A DNA stretch of 63,630 bases, counting the filler, from Octopus bimaculoides (taxonomy: Eukaryota): the NCBI RefSeq assembly GCF_001194135.2. It is 8 parts of 8 records of this genome, joined end to end, with 100 filler letters (N's around TTAATTAATTAA, not from the genome) between each part and the next. Parts side by side here need not be neighbours in the genome. Positions count along the whole stretch, not along the records: positions 46,586 to 57,897 come from NC_069002.1; 7 more parts are not named here. One strand, given 5' to 3'. The notes below the pieces were generated by a model. It did not search any database. It saw only the letters and a list, made by a program, of their open reading frames with translations, and was not told the origin of the DNA. A program made the position numbers and the translations under genes. Shown here in pieces: positions 46,111 to 57,897 of the stretch (position 1 is its first letter; the number at the start of each line of letters is the position of its first letter).

Positions 46111-46872
46111 AATAGGACTTAGAAACGATCTTTATCCCTTATTCAACTTGATCAAGATGGAGAACTCTGAGTAAGTTGCTTGGCGTACACGAAGTAGATA
46201 GAAGATCTCACTAAAAAAAAAACCCTATTCTATCGTCCAAAAAGACTGTGAGGGAAAAAGACGGGATGATTATTACAGGAATGCTTTTTATCAAAGGTCT
46301 ACTTGATCAAAGGTCGACTTGATCAAATTTAGATATACACATTCATATATAAAAAAAAACTCATATACACACACACATAAACACACACCAGCGAATTTTT
46401 AACGCATGCACATATATTTTAAAGGAAATATTTATATGCACTCATACACATTGTTTTCTCTGTCTGTCTGTCTGTCTCTGTCTCTNNNNNNNNNNNNNNN
46501 NNNNNNNNNNNNNNNNNNNNNNNNNNNNNTTAATTAATTAANNNNNNNNNNNNNNNNNNNNNNNNNNNNNNNNNNNNNNNNNNNNTATGTATATATGTAT
46601 ATATATATGTATGTATCTATATGTTTATATATTTATATGTATATCTATATGTATATAATCATACGTATATATAAGTATATATATACGTGTGTATGTATAT
46701 ATGTATATATGTACACACATACATATGCTTAATAGAGAGTAGATGTGACATGAAATGCGGTATGTAGGATTAGATGGGAAACTACGCAAGTAGTGTTTAA
46801 ATGTATGTATGTATGTATGTATGCATGTATGTATGTATGTATATATGTTTTATAAGACTCTGTGTGTGTGTT

Positions 46873-46921
<49 letters not shown>

Positions 46922-47698
46922 CTAATGCATATATATACATACATACATATATTTACATACATACATATATNNNNNNNNNNNNNNNNNNNNNNNNNNNNNN
47001 NNNNNNNNNNNNNNNNNNNNNNNNNNNNNNNNNNNNNNNNNNNNNNNNNNNNNNNNNNNNNNNNNNNNNNNNNNNNNNNNNNNNNNNNNNNNNNNNNNNN
47101 NNNNNNNNATATATATATATACGTATATAAACATGTGTGTTTATGTATGTACGTATATATATATATATGCATACACACAGATACACACACACACAGTCAC
47201 ACACTCATATGTGTGAGTATATATCTTCGAATGCATACGCGTCTATATTGATATATATATGCATACATTACATATATACACACTCACACAATCGTAGGTG
47301 ATAGAATATGATTGGACGTGGAAGGAAAGCAACCAGAGAATGGTTGTTGAAGAAAGTTAATGCAAAGAATAGGTGAGAAGAAATGGCAAAGAATGGCATT
47401 GATTGGGGGCGGCTGGCACCTTGCCTTGGCAACGTGTTTACCATATTTCCCGCCGGAATCATCTAAGAGGAACAAACAGAGTAGATTGAACTATAGGAAA
47501 GAGATGTATAAGTAAATGAATGAATAAATATGTGTAAAATATAAAAATACGGAGATAAATATTGCAGAGTTTTGTATACAAATAATAAGGAAAATAGGGA
47601 ATGAAAAAAAAGTGGGAAGCATGGAATGTAAAGAGATGAAAGGAAGGAAGGAAGGAAGGAAGGAAGGAAGGAAGGAAGGAAGAAAGAAAGAAAAAAGG

Positions 47699-47764
<66 letters not shown>

Positions 47765-47929
47765 GAAAAATAGAGGAAGAAAGAAAAAAGGGAGAAAGAA
47801 GAATAGAAGGGAAAGAAGAAAGAAGGAGTTAGTAAAATGAGGTAAGTAAGAGAATGGGATTGACTTTTATTTTGATTCTGAAATCTTTTAGAATTGTCTG
47901 CAATTGTAAAAGAAAACGGAATAATTGAA

Positions 47930-48490
47930 TGCTTTTTTCCAAGAATAATGGCACGAACAAGTTGAAAGAATTTTGTTTCGTTGATGTGACATGTTCTGCA
48001 GAAACAATAGAAGGAAATCTTTACCATAGGAAGGATATATGTAACCAAAATCTGAAGCACCGAGGAATTTTGGCGAGATATTTGGAACTATGGAGGTTCA
48101 AAACATCACAAAAGCAAATTGGTTAAGAGTAAGTGAAAATCGATCAAGACGAAAGAATATGAATTTTGGTCTCAAATTTTGACCCAAGACCAACAAGGTC
48201 GGGGGAGGAGCAGGTAAGTTGATTACATTGACCCTAGTACTCAACTGGTACTTATTTTATTAACCCGAAACGATGACGGGCAAAGTCAGTCTTATGGGAA
48301 CTTTCCATGGAAATTTATCATTCTACCGAAGCAAGGAAGGTAGGATATAATCATAGTGAAGAAGAAAAACAAACAGTATAAGAAAGATCATAGACATTGC
48401 AAGCCTATATGATGACAGAGTAGATATTAAGGCACGTGAGAAATCTGAGAAATGAAGAGATTGTGCAACATAGGGTTAAAATTCTTCCTG
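47930..48490 (+). mobile_element. Heavily decayed R4-type LINE pieces with a SINE B insertion (~48160-48290, minus strand)
   Basis: EFWRDIW-like and IIDIA..DRV..KILPVVIGAI-like translations. Confidence 0.4.
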
Positions 48491-48944
48491 TGGTTATTGG
48501 TGCAATTAGCACAATGCCCAAACTGATACATAAGAGGCTGAAGGAAACGAGAAATATATTTTTTAAAATATATTAAAATACCATACCGGTTTCAACGATT
48601 ATTCCTTTTTTTCTATTATAAATGTATCTACCCTCTTTATGGTGATACAGTGCGATTTGAAAGATATGTAGCTGATATTTCTTACAGTTCCAGATTCCAG
48701 CGCTGGCGCTTGACTCACAGGTAATTTTCACGATAATAAGAATAATACATACGACAATAACAACAACAATTACATCACACTTAATCTCAGGATGTCTTCA
48801 GTAGGGTCCACTCGGTTATACACATATTCAGACCAGATCTGGGGACAATTTTTTTTTTTTTGCACACACAAACAATTTAGCTGATACACTTCAAAATTAG
48901 GTTATGGGCACTGTCTTTCCATCTCTGAATTTAAAAAAATAGAC

Positions 48945-49345
48945 ACAGGCGTGGCTGTGTGGTAAGAAGCTTGTTTCCAACCACATGGTTCTGGGTTCAG
49001 TCCCACTGCATGGCACCTTGGGCAAATGTCTTCTACTAATAGCCTCGGGCCGACTAAAGCCTTGTGATTGGATTTAGTAGAAGGAAACTGAAAGAAACCC
49101 ATCGTATAGTTATATATACATGTGGGGGCGTACAGTTATATATACATGTGTTTTTGTGTCTGTGCTTGTCCCCCACCACCGGTGTTAGAGTGTCTACGTA
49201 CCCGTAACTTAACGGTTCGGCAGAAAAGGTAAATAGAACCACCAGCACCAGGCGTACGAAAATAAGTGCTGGGGGTCGATTCATTCGACTAAAAAACTCT
49301 TCAAGGTTGCGCCCCAGCATGGCCGCGGTGTAACGACTAAAACAA
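48945..49345 (+). mobile_element. SINE family A, full length
   Basis: Collinear with 39168-39560. Confidence 0.85.
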
Positions 49346-49418
49346 AAAAGCACATAAAAAAAAATAAAACATACACTCACAAACAAACGACAATTCTTTT
49401 TTTTTTTTTAATATTACC

Positions 49419-49498
49419 GGCTGACAAGATTCGAACTGATGATACAGAGGGCGGGGTAGTCGTTTTAGTCACCGTTCTACCGTTTCGGCTAAATCACC
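49419..49498 (-). pseudogene. tRNA-like remnant followed by an A-tail
   Basis: Minus strand has an A-box-like tagccgaaacgg and a B-box gttcgaatc, then taatatt and an A-rich run. No clean cloverleaf. Confidence 0.35.
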
Positions 49499-49639
49499 GC
49501 CGTGTAGATAAATTAAAGACCCTGGCAGCTATTTCAAATTAATAATCAGCCAAGCGAAATATTCCAAATTCCAACCCATATTCTTTAACCAAACATTTTA
49601 CAGAGTTTTATAGTGTTTACCGTCAAAATCACTCAACCG

Positions 49640-50195
49640 TGAATGAATATTACATCTTTGTCTTTTCTTTTCTTTCTTTTTCCTTTTTCTCTTTCTTTCA
49701 TTTTTTTTTCCTTTTACTTTTCTCGTTCATCGCATTCCTTCTCTTCCTCTTTCACCTCTCTTTTCCTCTCATTATTGTTCCTCTTCTTGCTCAATTCATT
49801 CTTCTACCTCTTCTTCTTTTTCTTCTTCCTTGCCTTCTTTTTTTCTTCCCTTTCTACCGTTCACTCCTTCTCTACTTCTCCTCCACCTCCTCCTCCTCGT
49901 CATCATCATCATCATCATCATCCTACTACTACCACTACCACTACTACCACCACCACTACTACCACCACCACTACTACCACCACCACTACTACCACCACCA
50001 CTACTACCACCACCACTACTACCACCACNNNNNNNNNNNNNNNNNNNNNNNNNNNNNNNNNNNNNNNNNNNNNNNNNNNNTACCACTACTACCACCACCA
50101 CTACTACCACCACCACTACTACCACCACCACTACTACCACCACCACTACTACCACCACCACCACTACTTCTACTACTACTACTACTACTACTACA

Positions 50196-50282
<87 letters not shown>

Positions 50283-50684
50283 GCTTCTTCTTTTCTGTAT
50301 TTTTACTCGTTCTACGTTTACTCATACGATTGTCTTATTGATCCTCTTCTTCTCCTTCTTCATCTTCTGCTTCTTTTTTTCTTTCTTCTTCATCTTCTTC
50401 TTCTTCTTCTTCTCCTTCTCCTCCTCCTTCTTCCCCCCCTACTTTTCCTTCTTCGCCTTCTTTGTTCCTTCTTCCAGTTTCTTCATTCCCCGACATCTTC
50501 TGCAGATACACTTCCCATAATCGCTATCGCCTTTGTGGTTGTTGTTGTTGTGGCTATTGTTCAAGTCTGTCGCTCACGCTGACATCTTTACCGTTTGTTC
50601 TCCTGCTCGTCTCCTCATTTCTCCTTTTTCTCTTTGTCATATTTCCGATTCTGTCTCCCTTCACTCTTCTTCTTCTTCTTCTTC

Positions 50685-50744
<60 letters not shown>

Positions 50745-51257
50745 GTCTTCTTCCTCATCTTCTTCTTCTTATTATTATTATTATTATTCCTCTTCTTCTT
50801 CTTCTTCTTCTTCACCTTCTTCTCCTTCCTCTTCTTCTTCTTATTATGATTCTTCTTCACCTTCTCCTTTTTCACCTTCTCCTTCTTCACCTTCTCCTTC
50901 TTCTTCTTCTTCACCTTCTCATTCTTCTACTTCTTCCTCTTCTTCTCTTTCTCCATCTTCACCTTCTTCTTCTTCTTCTTCTTCTTCTTCTTCTTCTTCT
51001 TCTTCTTCTCTTTCTTCTTCTTCTTCTTCTTCTTCTTCTTCTTCTTCTTCTTCTTCTTCTCCTCGCATCCTCCTCTTCCTCCTCCTCTTCGTACTCAATT
51101 TAGGGTATATATATATTTCTCTCCCACTCTTCCCTCGACCTCCTTATAGTTAAATTTCGAAACGTTTCTCCTTTCCGTATACCCAGTTTTACACCCCGCC
51201 CATGTGGGCACAAACACACACTCAAATAGACACATGCAAACATATGTATATATGTGC

Positions 51258-51302
<45 letters not shown>

Positions 51303-51310
51303 TGTGTATT

Positions 51311-51344
<34 letters not shown>

Positions 51345-51472
51345 AATGTATGTATACATGCACATGCATATATATGTGCATAAAACACCCATACGTTAAC
51401 GCATACATATACACGAAAACTTGGTCATAGTATACACACAGGCAAGCTGCATACACGCATGCTGCACGCATG

Positions 51473-51503
<31 letters not shown>

Positions 51504-52059
51504 ATATAAAGACATACCCATCTGCTAATTTATTGGATTCAATGGGTGAATTACTGCATGAACCGTGGAATCCCGGAAACGTCTTTTAAGGGAGTAAATA
51601 TTCTCAAAATATCCTCTATACACACGCACACGCACACACACACACACACATATTTCCACTTTATATATATATATGTATATATGTATATAGATGTATATAT
51701 ATATATATATTTATATACACACATATGCAGACATCTGTATTCACGTACATACAAACATATGTTTACCTACACACACAGATAGATACCTGCATATACATGA
51801 ACATATATGCATACATAGTTATATATGCATGTATATCTATACACATTCTTATACACATACACACGTGTGCACAGACATACTCTCTCTCTCTCACTCACAC
51901 ACACACACTCCCCCTAGATACACACACACCTACATACACACTCCCCTAGATACACACACACCTACATACACACACATCTACATACACACACACCTACACA
52001 CACATACACTCAGATAAAACATTCATATCTCATTTGCAATTAACATCTTTTATCAACTC

Positions 52060-52104
<45 letters not shown>

Positions 52105-52142
52105 CATTATTATTATTATTATTATTATTATCATTATTATTA

Positions 52143-52177
<35 letters not shown>

Positions 52178-52359
52178 TTATTATTATTTTATTATTATTA
52201 TTATTATTATTATTGTTATTATTATTATTATTATTATCATTATTATTATTATTATTATTATCATTATTATTATCATTATTATTATTTTTATTATTAGTAT
52301 TATTATTATTTTATTATTATTTTATTATTATTATTATTATTGTTATTATTATTTTATTA

Positions 52360-52423
<64 letters not shown>

Positions 52424-52512
52424 CATTATTATTATTATTATCATTATTATTATTATTATTATTATTTTATTATTATTTTATTATTATTATTATTATTATT
52501 ATTTTATTATTA

Positions 52513-52549
<37 letters not shown>

Positions 52550-52587
52550 TTATTATTATTTTATTTTTATTATTATTATTATTGTTA

Positions 52588-52623
<36 letters not shown>

Positions 52624-52725
52624 TTATTTTATTTTTTTATTATTATTATTATTGTTATTATTTATTATTATTATTATTATTATTATTTTATTATTATTTT
52701 ATTATTATTAATATTATTATTGTTA

Positions 52726-52769
<44 letters not shown>

Positions 52770-52862
52770 CATCATTATCGTCGTTATCGTCAACGATATC
52801 ATCATCAGTACCATTATTACCATCGTCATCGTCACCATCGTCATCATCATCATCATCACCAC

Positions 52863-52910
<48 letters not shown>

Positions 52911-53110
52911 TATCATCACCATTATCATCGTCACTATTGATATCGTGTCTTATTAATATCAATATGATTTCATTCATGTTACAGAACTATTGATCTCACT
53001 ATTGTTATTACGTCTATTATTGTTGTTGTTGCTGTTGTTCTTATAGTTATTATTCATGGTGGCTGCTACTGCTGCTGCTGTTGCTGCTGCTGCTGTTGTT
53101 TCTGCTGATG
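49640..53110. repeat. Trinucleotide/dinucleotide simple-repeat field (TTC, CAC/TAC, TTA, CAT, TG, CA)
   Basis: Direct reading; the (TTA)n tract spans ~52050-52770. Confidence 0.95.
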
Positions 53111-53260
53111 AGGATGATGCAGCCTGGATTAATTGACATCCCCAAACAAAATGTCCTAATTAGCTAAAACAGACATAAAAATTTATTGAAAACTGACAAC
53201 AGCAGCAATGGAGTGATCGAAAAATATATTTATTTATTTATCGTGAGAAATTGATTTTTG

Positions 53261-53465
53261 ACGGCGAGCTGGCGTAAACGTTAGCACGCCGGATAAAATG
53301 CTTAACGGTATTTCATCCATTTTTTACATTCTGAGTTCAAATTCCCCCGAGGTCGACTTCGCCTTTCATCCTTTCGCGGTCGAGAAAATAAGTACCAGTT
53401 ACGCACTGGTGGGGTCGATGTAATCGATTTAACTCCTCCATCAAACTTACGAGCCTTTTGCTAAA
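53261..53465 (+). mobile_element. SINE family B
   Basis: ggcgagctggcg..ttctgagttcaaatt..aggtcgacttcgcctttcatcc..ggggtcgatgtaatcga. Confidence 0.8.
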
Positions 53466-53484
53466 ATTTGAAATCATTATTACT

Positions 53485-53707
53485 CTTTTACTCTTTTACT
53501 TGTTTCAGTCATTTGACTGCGGCTATGCTGGAGCACCGCCTTTTGTCGAGAAAATCGACCCCAGGACTTATACTTTGGATGCCTAGTACTTATTCTATCG
53601 GTCTCTTTTTCCGAACCGCTAAGTTACGGGGACGAAAACACACCACCATCGGTTGTCAAGCGATGTTGGTAAGCAAGCTACTTATCACACAGCCACTCCT
53701 GCGCCTA
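53485..53707 (-). mobile_element. SINE family A with a large internal deletion (head joined to tail)
   Basis: The head ggcgcaggagtggctgtgtgataagtagcttgctta (53669-53707) is fused directly to the 3' part. Confidence 0.75.
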
Positions 53708-53922
53708 TTATTATTATTAATATTATCATTATTATTAATATTATCATTATAATTTATTTTATTATGTAATTTTTATTATATATATATTGTTTCCTGATAT
53801 GGTTTATTATATTATGTTTTTCTTCATTTTTCACCACATTTTGTTATATTTTGTCATAGTTTGTTATGTTATGTATCTATGCTTGTTTATCACGAAGTGA
53901 ACTGTTTCCAAAAAATAGAGTA

Positions 53923-54338
53923 ATAAAATTGTAGTATATTGTCAACTTAATGTGACAATCCCAATAAGGGGATACACTACTGCCGTTTAGCCCTAGGAAG
54001 CTGGACCGCTTCCTGTCGGCCTTGACACAATTACTGTGTCCTTAAGTTTGCGAGGGGGAGACAAGCTCCTCCACCCAGCCTAGCCAGCATTCAGGGACAT
54101 GTTTCTGAATATTTGCTCGTCATCAGCCTGAAGTAGCTTGCCATCTGGTTAAAGAAGCCTGTTTAGCCCTCGCAAACTTATATAATCATAGTGAAGTTTA
54201 TTCACTGATCAGCAAAATTAGAAATATAATATTTCTAAATCTCTCAGAGAGATTTAAGCAGTAGTGGAGCGATAAAGTTGTAGTATATTGTCAACTTAAT
54301 GTGACAATCCCCAATAAGGGGATACACTACTGCCGTTT
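53923..54338 (-). mobile_element. Retrozyme-like element: 349-350-nt unit plus 66-nt terminal redundancy
   Basis: 53923-53988 repeats at 54272-54338; internal hammerhead; numerous perfect stems; no ORF and no evident TSD. Confidence 0.75.
54090..54132 (-). ncRNA. Minimal type I hammerhead ribozyme
   Basis: Minus strand TTCAGG-CTGATGA-cgagcaaatattca-GAAACATGTC-CCTGAA: full catalytic core, 6-bp stem I, palindromic ACATGT helix III and a GUC cleavage triplet (cut between 54096 and 54095). Confidence 0.8.
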
Positions 54339-54534
54339 CAGTGATAAACGAATCATCACGCACTTCGTAAATTCATGGTCCACAGCACAGAAGCACAGAT
54401 ACTGTCACGTATTTCCTCGATTATCTCTACCTTTTCTTGTAGAGAATGCACTCATCTATGTCATTTGTTAGGATCAGCCATGTTCGTATTTTGTCTGTTC
54501 ACTATTCCATATTGAATGGTAAAGATTAAAGGGT

Positions 54535-54648
54535 AAAGACCCCCTTCTGTCATGAATGACCATGGGATTGCACCCAGGAAGTTACCCTCCGAAGAACAAG
54601 TCTGGGCAAGGTTGTATATGGAAGACCAGCAGTTGCCCATGCATACCA
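54535..54648 (-). mobile_element. SINE family D, 3' fragment
   Basis: Matches 33125-33243. Confidence 0.75.
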
Positions 54649-54649
54649 C

Positions 54650-55065
54650 CATGATAGATTATCCATTATGAATTGCTTGAACGGAACCAAACGGTCAACG
54701 CGGAACGCTATGTTCAACAGATGGAACGACTCAACATGGCTATTCAAGCGAAAAGACCTAATTAGCACGACAACACCCACCCTCATATCGCCAATATGAC
54801 CAAGGAAGCCATTCAAACGCATGGCTGGGAAGTGCTGCCACACCCGCCGTACTCTCCTGATTTGGCACCAACGGATTTCCACCTCTTTCGATCTCTTTCA
54901 AATGTTATGCGCGGAGTTTCGTTCAATACTGATGCAGAATTGAGAGCTTGGTTGGATCAATTTTTCGAGTTGAAACCGGGTGATTTCTACCAACGAGGTA
55001 TTGAAAATCTTGTCAAACATTGGGAAGAAGTTGTAAACTACAAGGGTGAATACATTATTGATTAA
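54650..55065 (+). mobile_element. mariner (DD34D) transposase, 3' half, disabled
   Basis: IIHYELLERNQTVNAERYVQQMERL..N*HDN..WEVLPHPPYSPDLAPTDFHLF..EYIID*. There are 34 residues between the HDN aspartate and the final D, plus one in-frame stop and a short deletion. Confidence 0.9.
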
Positions 55066-55324
55066 TTAGTTGTTATTTTTTATTANNNNNNNNNNNNNNN
55101 NNNNNNNNNNNNNNNNNNNNNNNNNNNNNNNNNNNNNNNNNNNNNNNNNNNNNNNNNNNNNNNNNNNNNNNNNNNNNNNNNNNNNNNNNNNNNNNNNNNN
55201 NNNNNNNNNNNNNNNNNNNNNNNNNNNNNNNNNNNNNNNNNNNNNNNNNNNNNNNNNNNNNNNNNNNNNNNNNNNNNNNNNNNNNNNNNNNNNNNNNNNN
55301 NNNNNNNNNNNNATATATATATAT

Positions 55325-55595
55325 TGATGATGATGAGGAGGAGGAGGATGATGATGATGAGGAGGAGGAGGAGGAGGATGACAACGATGATGTTGACGAT
55401 GACGATGGTGTTGACGATGATGTTGATGATGATAATGACGATGATGATGATGATGATGATGATGATAACGATGATGATGATCATCATCATCATTATCGTC
55501 GTCGTCGTTGTCATCATCATCATCACAATGTTGATGATCATGAAGTCGACCATGTCCAGAACGACGACGACGACGACGACGACGACGATGATGAC

Positions 55596-55635
<40 letters not shown>

Positions 55636-55688
55636 GTGATGACGATGATGATGATGATGGTGATGACGATGATGTTGATGATGACGAA

Positions 55689-55723
<35 letters not shown>

Positions 55724-56156
55724 CGGTCGTGATGATAGTAAGGATGATGGCATTGATGATGATGATAATGACGATGTTGATGATGACGATGATGATGACG
55801 ATGACGACGATGATGATGACGATGACGACGATGGCGGCGGTAAAGATGATGGTGATAATATTAATGACGGCGATGATAGGAGCGATCTGTTTCTTATTGC
55901 CATTGTCACTGTTGTTTTAGCTGTTGTTGTTGTTGTTCTTGTTGTTGTTGTTCTTGTTGTTGTTGTTCTTGTTGTTGTTGTTCTTGTTGTTGTTGTTGTT
56001 GTTACGGACTCGGGGCCCATTATTGTAGATAGTGGCTGACGTTACGGTTGATGTTGTCACTGTGATTGTTATTCGTGTTGTTGTTGTTGCTGTTGTTGTT
56101 ATGTTACTATCGCATTTCCTGTTTATTGCTGTCCTTGTTTTTGTTACAGCTTTTCG

Positions 56157-56201
<45 letters not shown>

Positions 56202-56337
56202 TTATGTTATTTTTCTCACTATCTCTATTCCAACATTCTTCTTCTTCTTCTTCTTCTTCTTCTTCAACTTCTTCTTCTTCTTCTTACCTCCTCTCCTCTT
56301 CCGTACACCACTCAATTATTTTTTACCTTACATCTTT

Positions 56338-56373
<36 letters not shown>

Positions 56374-57476
56374 NNNNNNNNNNNNNNNNNNNNNNNNNNN
56401 NNNNNNNNNNNNNNNNNNNNNNNNNNNNNNNNNNNNNNNNNNNNNNNNNNNNNNNNNNNNNNNNNNNNNNNNNNNNNNNNNNNNNNNNNNNNNNNNNNNN
56501 NNNNNNNNNNNNNNNNNNNNNNNNNNNNNNNNNNNNNNNNNNNNNNNNNNNNNNNNNNNNNNNNNNNNNNNNNNNNNNNNNNNNNNNNNNNNNNNNNNNN
56601 NNNNNNNNNNNNNNNNNNNNNNNNNNNNNNNNNNNNNNNNNNNNNNNNNNNNNNNNNNNNNNNNNNNNNNNNNNNNNNNNNNNNNNNNNNNNNNNNNNNN
56701 NNNNNNNNNNNNNNNNNNNNNNNNNNNNNNNNNNNNNNNNNNNNNNNNNNNNNNNNNNNNNNNNNNNNNNNNNNNNNNNNNNNNNNNNNNNNNNNNNNNN
56801 NNNNNNNNNNNNNNNNNNNNNNNNNNNNNNNNNNNNNNNNNNNNNNNNNNNNNNNNNNNNNNNNNNNNNNNNNNNNNNNNNNNNNNNNNNNNNNNNNNNN
56901 NNNNNNNNNNNNNNNNNNNNNNNNNNNNNNNNNNNNNNNNNNNNNNNNNNNNNNNNNNNNNNNNNNNNNNNNNNNNNNNNNNNNNNNNNNNNNNNNNNNN
57001 NNNNNNNNNNNNNNNNNNNNNNNNNNNNNNNNNNNNNNNNNNNNNNNNNNNNNNNNNNNNNNNNNNNNNNNNNNNNNNNNNNNNNNNNNNNNNNNNNNNN
57101 NNNNNNNNNNNNNNNNNNNNNNNNNNNNNNNNNNNNNNNNNNNNNNNNNNNNNNNNNNNNNNNNNNNNNNNNNNNNNNNNNNNNNNNNNNNNNNNNNNNN
57201 NNNNNNNNNNNNNNNNNNNNNNNNNNNNNNNNNNNNNNNNNNNNNNNNNNNNNNNNNNNNNNNNNNNNNNNNNNNNNNNNNNNNNNNNNNNNNNNNNNNC
57301 ACATCTTCGGCTTCCCGCCCCAACAAACACATTTGGCCACTCTTACGACTATAAAAATCACACAACAACAACAACAACAACAACAAAAGAAAGAACAACA
57401 ACACCGCCTCCATTCACCCATTAGCATTAACAAAAACAACGATCAGAAAGGTAACAATAATTTATTCCCTCACACC

Positions 57477-57513
<37 letters not shown>

Positions 57514-57594
57514 TTTGAGGTAGTAGTTAGGAAGTAACAATAACTACGCTTTTTGATAATGTCATAATAATGATGTCGATGTAATAACAACAAC

Positions 57595-57644
<50 letters not shown>

Positions 57645-57661
57645 TAATAATAATAATAATG

Positions 57662-57701
<40 letters not shown>

Positions 57702-57897
57702 TAATAATAATAATGATGATGATGATGATAGTAATAATAATAATAATAATATAAATAATAGCCACAACAGCAACAACAAATGCAATCACCAACAACCATC
57801 CTCCGGCACCAACGTCTTCATAAAGGAATGCAATAATAATAAAGTTAAGTAATATATTTTAATACAAGCAGAAGAAGAAGAAGAAGAAGAAGAAGAA
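55325..57897. repeat. Simple-repeat field ((GAT)n, (TTG)n, (TTC)n, (CA)n, (TAG)n, (AAT)n) around a large gap
   Basis: Direct reading. Confidence 0.95.

What the first reader, a model, noticed from the sequence alone, without database searches (positions are those of the whole stretch)
53923..54338. Candidate octopus retrozyme: 349-nt hammerhead unit with terminal redundancy
Seen: a 66-67 bp direct repeat (53923-53988 and 54272-54338, offset 349-350) brackets a non-coding unit. On the minus strand the unit holds TTCAGG-CTGATGA-cgagcaaatattca-GAAACATGTC-CCTGAA, with the complete hammerhead core, a perfect 6-bp stem I that extends through bulges (ccag..ggc..agc / gct..gct..ctgg), a palindromic ACATGT helix III and a GUC site at 54096. 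Established: minimal type I hammerheads with a palindromic helix III cleave as dimers and mark Penelope-like repeats and metazoan non-LTR retrozymes, which are tandem few-hundred-nt units expressed as circular RNAs. Inference: a ~1.2-unit copy is what reverse transcription running past the origin of a ~349-nt circle would leave, so this may be a cephalopod viroid-like circRNA family. Caveats: stem II has a C.A mismatch at its base (repairable by reversing one CpG-type G>A change), and this copy has only one ribozyme, so it cannot excise a monomer alone.
Basis: partly seen in the sequence, partly recalled or inferred. Interest (0 to 1): 0.92.

Follow-up and report, generated by a model that had tools for sequence, protein, structure and literature searches.

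The report
Decayed hammerhead retrozyme-like repeat copy
This is one old, mutated genomic copy of a small non-coding mobile element that carries a classic animal-type hammerhead ribozyme, a kind of element already known in many animals including molluscs, so it is real but not a new kind of thing.

Summary
A 71/72-nt direct repeat (53918-53988 and 54267-54338, offset 349/350) brackets a non-coding ~349-nt unit, and the minus strand carries a complete hammerhead core with a GUC site at 54096. The motif is not just a minimal core. It matches the canonical metazoan type I hammerhead outside the core too: 6-bp stem I, UAC/U bulge, 4-position helix II, CAAAUA loop 2 and a loop-less palindromic helix III. 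These match the Rfam Hammerhead_1 consensus and the printed Schistosoma-derived N79 sequence. This copy is defective: the conserved G10.1-C11.1 pair is a C.A mismatch. Rfam gives only a sub-threshold hit (HH9, 21 bits against a cut-off of 52), and the active fold loses to a competing fold. The unit (42% GC, no ORF, fold z = -8, better on the ribozyme strand) fits published metazoan non-LTR retrozymes, which are non-autonomous Penelope-like-element derivatives. The "more-than-one-unit copy from a circular template" idea is already published. Copy number, tandem arrays, circular RNA and the host species could not be tested, because no animal genome collection was available. Verdict: a probable dead copy of a known kind of element, of moderate to low interest.

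The parts
53989..54338 (-). One full ~350-nt unit (equivalently 53923-54271): non-coding, 42% GC, highly self-paired RNA on the minus strand
   Evidence: MFE -134.3/-133.3 kcal/mol against a shuffle mean of about -86 (z about -8). The circular fold is -128 to -131. The plus strand is about 15 kcal/mol weaker; no ORF above 56 aa. GC 0.42, CpG observed/expected 0.45.
53918..53988 (-). Terminal redundancy, copy 1 (3' end of the insert on the ribozyme strand); the extra ~0.19 unit
   Evidence: 60-nt core identical to copy 2 except for one C indel; three transitions at the left edge.
54267..54338 (-). Terminal redundancy, copy 2 (5' end of the insert on the ribozyme strand)
   Evidence: It holds hairpins CCCC-UUAUU-GGGG and UUGUCAC-AUUAAG-UUGACAA, closed by GGCAGUAGUG/CACUACUGCU.
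54081..54141 (-). Type I hammerhead motif including the outer stem I extension and UAC/U internal loop
   Evidence: Rfam Hammerhead_HH9, 21.0 bits, E=0.0015, full-length alignment (gathering score 52); same layout as the Rfam Hammerhead_1 consensus and verified members.
54120..54126 (-). Catalytic box CUGAUGA (C3-A9)
54106..54119 (-). Helix II and loop 2: CGAG-CAAAUA-UUCA. The pairs are C.A (10.1/11.1, defective), G-C, A-U and G.U. The loop is identical to the family consensus.
   Evidence: G10.1 and C11.1 in all four reference sequences. (helix II pair probabilities 0.15-0.24).
54097..54105 (-). GAA (G12-A14) plus the palindromic helix III ACAUGU, which has no loop and can form only between two ribozyme copies
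   Evidence: Read directly from the sequence. The Rfam consensus likewise has a loop-less palindrome, ACGcgCGU. The dimer mechanism is described.
54096..54096 (-). C17 of GUC; the predicted cleavage is 3' of this base, between 54096 and 54095
54043..54180 (-). Long imperfect hairpin arm with the hammerhead at its tip (GUUUGCGAGGG...CCCUCGCAAAC at the base)
   Evidence: I1: 36-nt arms, 78% complementary.; five G.U pairs in this arm on the minus strand would be C.A mismatches on the plus strand.

Best explanation
The region 53918-54338 is a single genomic insertion of about 1.19 units of a ~349-nt non-coding retroelement. It is of the metazoan non-LTR retrozyme type, meaning a non-autonomous element dependent on Penelope-like elements (PLEs). 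Its RNA sense is the minus strand. Inferred life cycle of the parent family, following the published model: tandem or longer-than-unit copies are transcribed. The canonical type I hammerhead has a helix III that is only a 6-nt palindrome, so two ribozymes pair to form the active dimer. Cleavage after GUC releases a ~349-nt monomer with 5'-OH and 2',3'-cyclic phosphate ends. A host tRNA ligase circularises it into a highly base-paired circle. A PLE reverse transcriptase copies the circle past its starting point and integrates a more-than-unit copy, which leaves the 66-71-nt terminal redundancy. This particular copy is old and probably inert. It has one ribozyme, a C.A mismatch at the conserved G10.1-C11.1 pair, CpG depletion, and about 5% divergence between its two redundant ends. 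Shown here: the repeat, the ribozyme homology, the RNA-like fold and its strand bias, and the defect. Inferred only: family membership, mobilisation by a PLE, the circular RNA, and past activity.
For: Repeat and unit. Canonical hammerhead: the motif matches the class pattern including the UAC bulge and CAAAUA loop (1 match, 0 of 100 shuffles). The same pattern retrieved 15 natural loci, most with a perfect G...C-closed helix II, and three of them pass Rfam Hammerhead_1. Alignment to those and to the printed N79/Sm1 sequence shows all invariant columns shared except 10.1 and 11.1. Rfam reports an HH9 hit at E=0.0015 over the full motif. Retrozyme-like traits: 349 nt (mussel retrozymes are 350-390 bp), 42% GC (published <45-50%), no ORF, highly self-paired. 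Strand bias: the minus strand folds about 15 kcal/mol better, with 8 G.U pairs and no A.C 1x1 mismatch, against 2 A.C on the plus strand. No RT or endonuclease is nearby. The canonical 6-bp/4-bp ribozyme is typical of retrozymes rather than of PLE terminal repeats, whose min-HHRs have helix II of 7-8 bp and helix I of 4-5 bp. The more-than-unit copy from a circular template is the published model. Monomer derivatives are common in retrozyme families. Decay: CG vs TA between the repeat copies and CpG observed/expected 0.45.
Against: Only one copy was seen, and no relative was found anywhere. The available collections do not contain this host's genome, so the multi-copy nature is assumed, not shown. 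The locus has 1.19 units and one ribozyme, not the tandem array that defines retrozymes. The ribozyme fails Rfam gathering scores. Its active fold (-6.6 kcal/mol) is less stable than a competing fold (-12.8) that sequesters CUGA. No target-site duplication could be identified. On the minus strand an A-rich stretch follows the insert (53780-53905), which could instead point to LINE-type mobilisation.
Confidence: 0.62

Rival explanations
1. The locus is really a longer tandem array (satellite-like retrozyme array of n+0.19 units) that a short-read assembler collapsed to its minimal path. It would then hold several ribozymes and could release monomers.
For: The piece has four N runs typical of short-read scaffolds. 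Retrozymes normally occur as dimers up to large multimers. A collapsed array would appear as one unit plus the overlap between the entry and exit points.
Against: The two redundant segments differ by an indel and three substitutions, so they are distinct genomic segments. No N run lies within 750 bp of the unit. There is no positive evidence for extra units.
Confidence: 0.15
2. It is a remnant of an autonomous Penelope-like element: a solo or truncated pseudo-LTR region whose RT/endonuclease part has been deleted, not a separate non-autonomous family.
For: PLE insertions are partial tandems with pseudo-LTRs that carry hammerheads. Retrozymes and PLE pseudo-LTRs are phylogenetically related.
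Against: No RT or GIY-YIG remnant is present in 11 kb. Metazoan PLE hammerheads are min-HHRs with helix II of 7-8 bp and helix I of 4-5 bp, whereas this one is the canonical 6/4 type with loop-loop nucleotides. A complete head-to-tail junction within 349 nt shows that the repeating unit itself is only ~349 nt.
Confidence: 0.1
3. It is a SINE-like or other short retroposon mobilised by a LINE, like the original description of Schistosoma Sm-alpha. It carries a relic hammerhead, and the 66-71-nt repeat is an internal duplication unrelated to a circular intermediate.
For: On the minus strand the insert is followed by an A-rich stretch (53780-53905). The neighbourhood is full of other retroposon debris.
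Against: ARAGORN finds no tRNA-like head. The A-rich stretch is not a poly(A) tail and merges into a microsatellite. The duplication joins the unit's end to its start in perfect register, as expected of a head-to-tail junction.
Confidence: 0.08
4. It is a chance hammerhead-like motif inside an unrelated palindrome-rich DNA repeat.
For: The loose descriptor is expected 50-100 times by chance in a 2.7-Gb genome. Helix II is defective, and Rfam gathering scores are not reached.
Against: Ten further nucleotides outside the descriptor (UAC bulge, opposing U, CAAAUA loop) and the exact 4+6+4 helix II geometry match the family consensus. That lowers the genome-wide chance expectation by several orders of magnitude. 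The motif also sits on the better-folding strand, at the tip of an arm stabilised by G.U pairs.
Confidence: 0.02

Closest known systems
Metazoan non-LTR retrozymes (Cervera & de la Pena 2020, PMC7229834; e.g. Mytilus 350-390-bp repeats, coral 220-240 bp, axolotl 330/350 bp)
   Same: Non-coding unit of a few hundred nt with low GC. Canonical type I hammerhead with 6-bp helix I, 4-position helix II and a short palindromic helix III that requires a dimer. Highly self-paired predicted RNA. Head-to-tail junction. No LTR, PBS or PPT.
   Different: This locus has only 1.19 units and one ribozyme, not an array. Family size and circular RNA are unknown. Helix II has a C.A mismatch at its base; the nearest precedent is the U.U mismatch at the base of helix II in the weakly active axolotl HHR_Amex2.
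Schistosoma mansoni Sm-alpha/Sm1 hammerhead (engineered derivative N79, printed in PMC12550524) and the Rfam RF00163 Hammerhead_1 consensus
   Same: UAC bulge, 6-bp stem I, CUGAUGA, 4-nt helix II strands, CAAAUA loop 2, GAAAC, GUC, and a single U opposite the bulge.
   Different: Helix II is CGAG/UUCA instead of GUCC/GGAC. Helix III is a 6-nt rather than 8-nt palindrome. No Hammerhead_1 match was reported for it (gathering score 34).
Rfam RF02275 Hammerhead_HH9 (conserved amniote type I hammerhead)
   Same: Best Rfam match. The full-length alignment includes the outer stem and internal loop.
   Different: It scores 21 bits against a gathering score of 52. HH9 has a closed 3-bp helix III with a loop and is a single-copy intronic motif, not a repeat.
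Penelope-like elements and their pseudo-LTR min-HHRs (Cervera & de la Pena 2014, PMC4209133; Craig et al. 2021, PMC8557442)
   Same: Partial-tandem (more-than-unit) insertion architecture. Dimer-dependent type I hammerheads. PLEs are the proposed source of the reverse transcriptase.
   Different: No RT/GIY-YIG ORF is present. The ribozyme is the canonical type, not the min-HHR type. The unit is only ~349 nt.

Membership tests
Hammerhead ribozyme, type I (Rfam clan CL00010) | Conserved catalytic core: C3-U4-G5-A6-N7-G8-A9, G12-A13-A14, A15.1-U16.1, and H17 not G | tested here: met
   CUGAUGA 54126-54120, GAA 54105-54103, A15.1 at 54102, U16.1 at 54097, C17 at 54096.
Hammerhead ribozyme, type I (Rfam clan CL00010) | Helix I open-ended and adjacent to the core on both sides (type I topology), about 6 bp | tested here: met
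   UUCAGG/CCUGAA forms six Watson-Crick pairs and continues through a UAC/U internal loop into further pairs.
Hammerhead ribozyme, type I (Rfam clan CL00010) | Helix II closed by the highly conserved G10.1-C11.1 pair | tested here: not met
   The candidate has C10.1 and A11.1. All four reference sequences in alignment A1 and most of the 15 natural loci have G...C. The literature calls this pair highly conserved.
Hammerhead ribozyme, type I (Rfam clan CL00010) | Loop 1 / loop 2 nucleotides for the tertiary contact in canonical metazoan members | tested here: met
   The UAC bulge, the opposing U and the CAAAUA loop are identical to the Rfam Hammerhead_1 consensus and N79/Sm1. That these nucleotides make the contact is established knowledge and was not tested here.
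Hammerhead ribozyme, type I (Rfam clan CL00010) | Score at or above Rfam's curated gathering score | tested here: not met
   No hit over 11 kb or over 461 nt. On 71 nt, HH9 scores 21.0 bits against 52, and Hammerhead_1 (gathering score 34) is not reported. Positive controls scored 35-47 bits.
Hammerhead ribozyme, type I (Rfam clan CL00010) | Self-cleavage at the predicted site | not testable with these tools
   In silico only: the active fold is -6.6 against an MFE of -12.8 kcal/mol, and helix II pair probabilities are 0.15-0.24.
Metazoan non-LTR retrozyme | Non-coding unit of about 150-450 nt with low GC (<45-50%) | tested here: met
   349/350 nt, GC 0.42, no ORF above 56 aa.
Metazoan non-LTR retrozyme | Head-to-tail tandem repeats (dimer or more), each unit with a hammerhead | tested here: not met
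   There is one head-to-tail junction but only 1.19 units and a single ribozyme. Array collapse in a short-read assembly cannot be excluded. Monomer derivatives are reported as common.
Metazoan non-LTR retrozyme | Predicted RNA stable and highly self-paired | tested here: met
   z = -8.0 to -8.5, 63% of bases paired in the circular fold, and the ribozyme strand folds better.
Metazoan non-LTR retrozyme | Multi-copy family dispersed in the genome | not testable with these tools
   No animal-genome DNA collection is available. Searches were negative, and the control shows the host's non-genic sequence is absent from the protein collection.
Metazoan non-LTR retrozyme | Expression as linear and circular RNA of unit length | not testable with these tools
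   No transcriptome data are accessible.
Autonomous Penelope-like element | ORF with a telomerase-like RT and a GIY-YIG endonuclease between the pseudo-LTRs | tested here: not met
   No such ORF or Pfam hit in 46586-57897. The N runs (1343 nt in total) are too short to hide one.
Plant-type LTR retrozyme | Type III hammerhead inside each ~350-bp LTR, with PBS, PPT and a 4-bp target-site duplication | tested here: not met
   The ribozyme is type I and lies outside the 66-71-nt repeats. The bases flanking the insert (GAGTA / CAGTG) are not a duplication.

The most novel reading that the evidence does not exclude
The copy is a fossil of a still-active retrozyme family in this (reportedly cephalopod) genome that produces abundant ~349-nt hammerhead-processed circular RNAs. 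This would be the first such family described for cephalopods. Its family consensus might also carry a non-canonical 10.1-11.1 pair (C-G) that still supports dimeric cleavage.
Probability: 0.3. Interest if true: 0.45.

Novelty: new member of a known kind. Interest (0 to 1): 0.3.

Why it matters
If confirmed genome-wide, it would extend ribozyme-processed circular-RNA retroelements (retrozymes) to another molluscan lineage and give a defined ~349-nt unit to look for in RNA data. It would not change the current picture. Canonical type I hammerheads in short repeats, their dimer-dependent cleavage, their circular RNAs and their link to Penelope-like elements are all already described in animals, including a mollusc. 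The practical value here is a worked example of a decayed copy. It escapes Rfam thresholds but is recognisable from the tertiary-contact nucleotides.

Tried and rejected
1. Rfam on the whole piece and on 461 nt gave no hammerhead. Only a 71-nt search revealed the sub-threshold HH9 match. The many miRNA 'hits' lie on microsatellites and were dismissed.
2. Relatives through spurious ORFs: a six-frame concatenated query found nothing. A control with an ORF from the neighbouring SINE-like repeat also found nothing, so the negative says nothing about copy number.
3. Exact look-ups of two window ORFs were not on record.
4. DNA pattern scans with the family-specific hammerhead and the repeat hairpin in metagenome and viral contigs gave 0 matches.
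5. Sampling about 90 kb around mariner relatives (L016-L020) found no unit and no SINE match, so those contigs come from other organisms.
6. Insertion into the neighbouring mariner was rejected. Mariner homology starts sharply at 54657 and does not resume left of the unit.
7. tRNA-derived SINE head: none found.
8. LTR-type reading was rejected: no TG...CA termini, no target-site duplication, and the ribozyme lies outside the repeats.
9. A first chance simulation timed out and was redone.
10. Homodimer cofolding (-37.0 vs 2 x -12.8 kcal/mol) was not used as evidence, because any hairpin-rich sequence gives such a duplex.

Full report
Observation. A direct repeat lies at 53923-53988 and 54272-54338 (97% over 67 columns, E=5e-27). 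A pairwise alignment shows a 60-nt core identical apart from one C indel. Similarity extends left to 53918/54267 with three transition differences, two of which turn a CG in copy 2 into TA in copy 1. The right boundary is sharp, after GTTT at 53988/54338. The offset is 349/350 nt. No other copy of any part of the unit occurs in the piece 46586-57897.

On the minus strand the motif reads UAC (54135-54133), UUCAGG (54132-54127), CUGAUGA (54126-54120), CGAG-CAAAUA-UUCA (54119-54106), GAA (54105-54103), ACAUGU (54102-54097), C17 (54096) and CCUGAA (54095-54090).

Is it more than chance? A descriptor with the core, A15.1-U16.1, a 15.2-16.2 pair, H17 and at least 6 Watson-Crick pairs in stem I, with helix II left free, occurs 1-2 times per 100 Mb of Markov-1 sequence. 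That is about 2-4e-4 per piece, but 50-100 per 2.7-Gb genome, so on its own it would not be proof. The decisive point is what lies outside that descriptor.

The Bio-protocol paper PMC12550524 prints the Schistosoma Sm1-derived N79 ribozyme..GCAGG UAC AUCCAG CUGAUGA GUCC CAAAUA GGAC GAAAC..GUC CUGGAU U CC.. The candidate reads ..GCAAGC UAC UUCAGG CUGAUGA CGAG CAAAUA UUCA GAAAC AU GUC CCUGAA U GCUGG... The two share the UAC bulge, a 6-bp stem I, a 4-position helix II, an identical CAAAUA loop and the single U opposite the bulge.

The pattern TAC-N6-CTGATGA-N4-CAAATA-N4-GAAAC matches once in the window and in none of 100 shuffles. In JGI metagenome contigs it retrieved 15 loci, most with a perfect helix II closed by G...C. 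Three of them pass Rfam Hammerhead_1 at 35-47 bits. The Rfam consensus printed there, aUccag-CUGAcGA-GUCC-CAAAUA-GGAC-GAAACGcgCGUC-cuggAu, has the same geometry, including a loop-less palindromic helix III. The motif is therefore a genuine relative of the canonical metazoan type I hammerhead: helix I 6 bp, helix II 4 bp, and helix III of 1-2 bp with a 2-4-nt palindromic loop. It is not the 'min-HHR' of Penelope-like elements, which has helix II of 7-8 bp and helix I of 4-5 bp.

State of this copy. The ribozyme is defective. In alignment A1 the candidate shares every invariant column with three Rfam-verified natural members and N79, except G10.1 (C here) and C11.1 (A here). That pair is described as highly conserved. 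Rfam reports no hammerhead over 11 kb or over 461 nt. Only on 71 nt does Hammerhead_HH9 appear, at 21.0 bits and E=0.0015 against a gathering score of 52, with the mismatch flagged.

The active fold costs -6.6 kcal/mol against an MFE of -12.8 for a competitor that pairs CUGA of the core with UCAG. Helix II pairs have probabilities of 0.15-0.24. But it would give C-G, not the canonical G-C, and even then the active fold (-10.1) loses to the MFE (-14.5). A partial precedent is the axolotl HHR_Amex2, which has a U.U mismatch at the base of helix II and cleaves weakly as a monomer and better as a dimer.

The unit. The 349-nt unit has no ORF above 56 aa and 42% GC. On the minus strand it folds at -134.3 kcal/mol against -86.4 for shuffles (z=-8.5). 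The circular folds give -128 to -131 with 63% of bases paired. The hammerhead sits at the tip of a 138-nt imperfect hairpin arm (54043-54180).

The plus strand folds about 15 kcal/mol worse. The minus-strand fold has 8 G.U pairs and no A.C 1x1 mismatch, and five of those G.U pairs are in the ribozyme arm. The plus-strand fold has two A.C mismatches. The numbers are small, but the bias points to an RNA-level structure on the ribozyme strand rather than a plain DNA palindrome. No other Rfam family matches either strand, and there is no tRNA-like head.

Context. To the left lie a (TAT)n tract and a SINE-like repeat (53260-53712) with partial copies elsewhere in the piece. To the right, after about 320 nt of unassigned sequence, lies the 3' 430 bp of a mariner (54657-55085), cut by an N run. 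The mariner homology does not resume left of the unit, so the unit is not an insertion into it. No reverse transcriptase or GIY-YIG remnant is present in the piece. I found no target-site duplication. Short inverted matches in the flanks remain unexplained.

Interpretation. Size, base composition, lack of coding capacity, the self-paired RNA, the canonical type I ribozyme with a dimer-dependent helix III and the head-to-tail junction all match the metazoan non-LTR retrozymes. Those are described by Cervera and de la Pena (PMC7229834), who report 350-390-bp units in a mussel. [quoted passage not shown]

I therefore read the locus as an old, probably inert, roughly 1.19-unit copy of such an element. 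The steps from transcription to circle to reintegration are inferred from the literature and are not shown here.

Limits. No animal-genome DNA collection was available. All attempts to find relatives failed. A control shows that the host's non-genic sequence is simply absent from the protein collection. About 90 kb sampled around mariner relatives came from other organisms. Copy number, tandem arrays, a family consensus, circular RNA and the 'octopus' origin all remain untested. Because the piece looks like a short-read scaffold (four N runs), 1.19 units is a lower bound for this locus.

Verdict. This copy is degenerate, however, and the kind of element and its mechanism are already known, including in molluscs. 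It is a new member of a known kind, with interest about 0.3.

Noticed in passing
window 53260-53712; also 48207-48287, 48935-48981, 49175-49350: A dispersed SINE-like repeat, with partial inverted copies at 68-83% identity, lies just left of the unit. ARAGORN calls no tRNA in it, and a spurious ORF from it has no relatives in the protein collection.
   Followed up: partly
window 54657-55085 (+): The 3' ~430 bp of a mariner/Tc1-type transposon (Transposase_1/DDE_3 C-terminus, with stops upstream) is cut off by the N run at 55086. Relatives at 77-90% DNA identity occur in ENA eukaryotic contigs and a TARA Oceans scaffold (L016-L020).
   Followed up: yes
window 53885-53899 and 54341-54368: Short inverted matches flank the unit: GTTTATCAC/GTGATAAAC and ACGAAGTG/CACTTCGT, in swapped order. 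They may be the remains of a palindromic target or of another element. Unexplained.
   Followed up: no
window 46586-57897 (e.g. 46665-47204, 51208-51504, 55418-55606): Rfam E-value hits to many miRNA families (mir-297, MIR842, mir-466 and others) all fall on TG/TA/TGA microsatellites and are far below the gathering scores. They are false positives.
   Followed up: yes
L003:517-567(-), L005:512-556(-), L014:1296-1341(+): Canonical type I hammerheads passing the Rfam Hammerhead_1 gathering score sit on short JGI metagenome contigs. No tandem repeat surrounds them within the contigs.
   Followed up: partly
L004:1391-1425(-), L006:1375-1409(+): Two metagenome contigs share a hammerhead-like motif whose helix II is also degenerate (CAGU-CAAAUA-UUCU). 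It superficially resembles the candidate's CGAG-CAAAUA-UUCA, with 86% identity over 28 nt, which is probably coincidence.
   Followed up: no
L016 (-) strand, about 12104: An unrelated animal contig holds a hammerhead-like motif, CTGATGA-GAGT-TTAAA-ACTC-GAAAC-CATG-ATC, with a 6-bp stem I partner (AGGCAG). It resembles the Penelope-type min-HHR.
   Followed up: no
window 48424-48573 (+): The stop-free peptide ...KILPVVIGAISTMPKLIHKRLKE... resembles, from memory, the C-terminal tail of invertebrate non-LTR retrotransposon ORF2 proteins. Pfam gave no hit.
   Followed up: partly
window 46971-47108, 50029-50080, 55086-55312, 56374-57299: Four N runs indicate a gapped short-read scaffold, so tandem repeats in this piece may be collapsed.
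   Followed up: no
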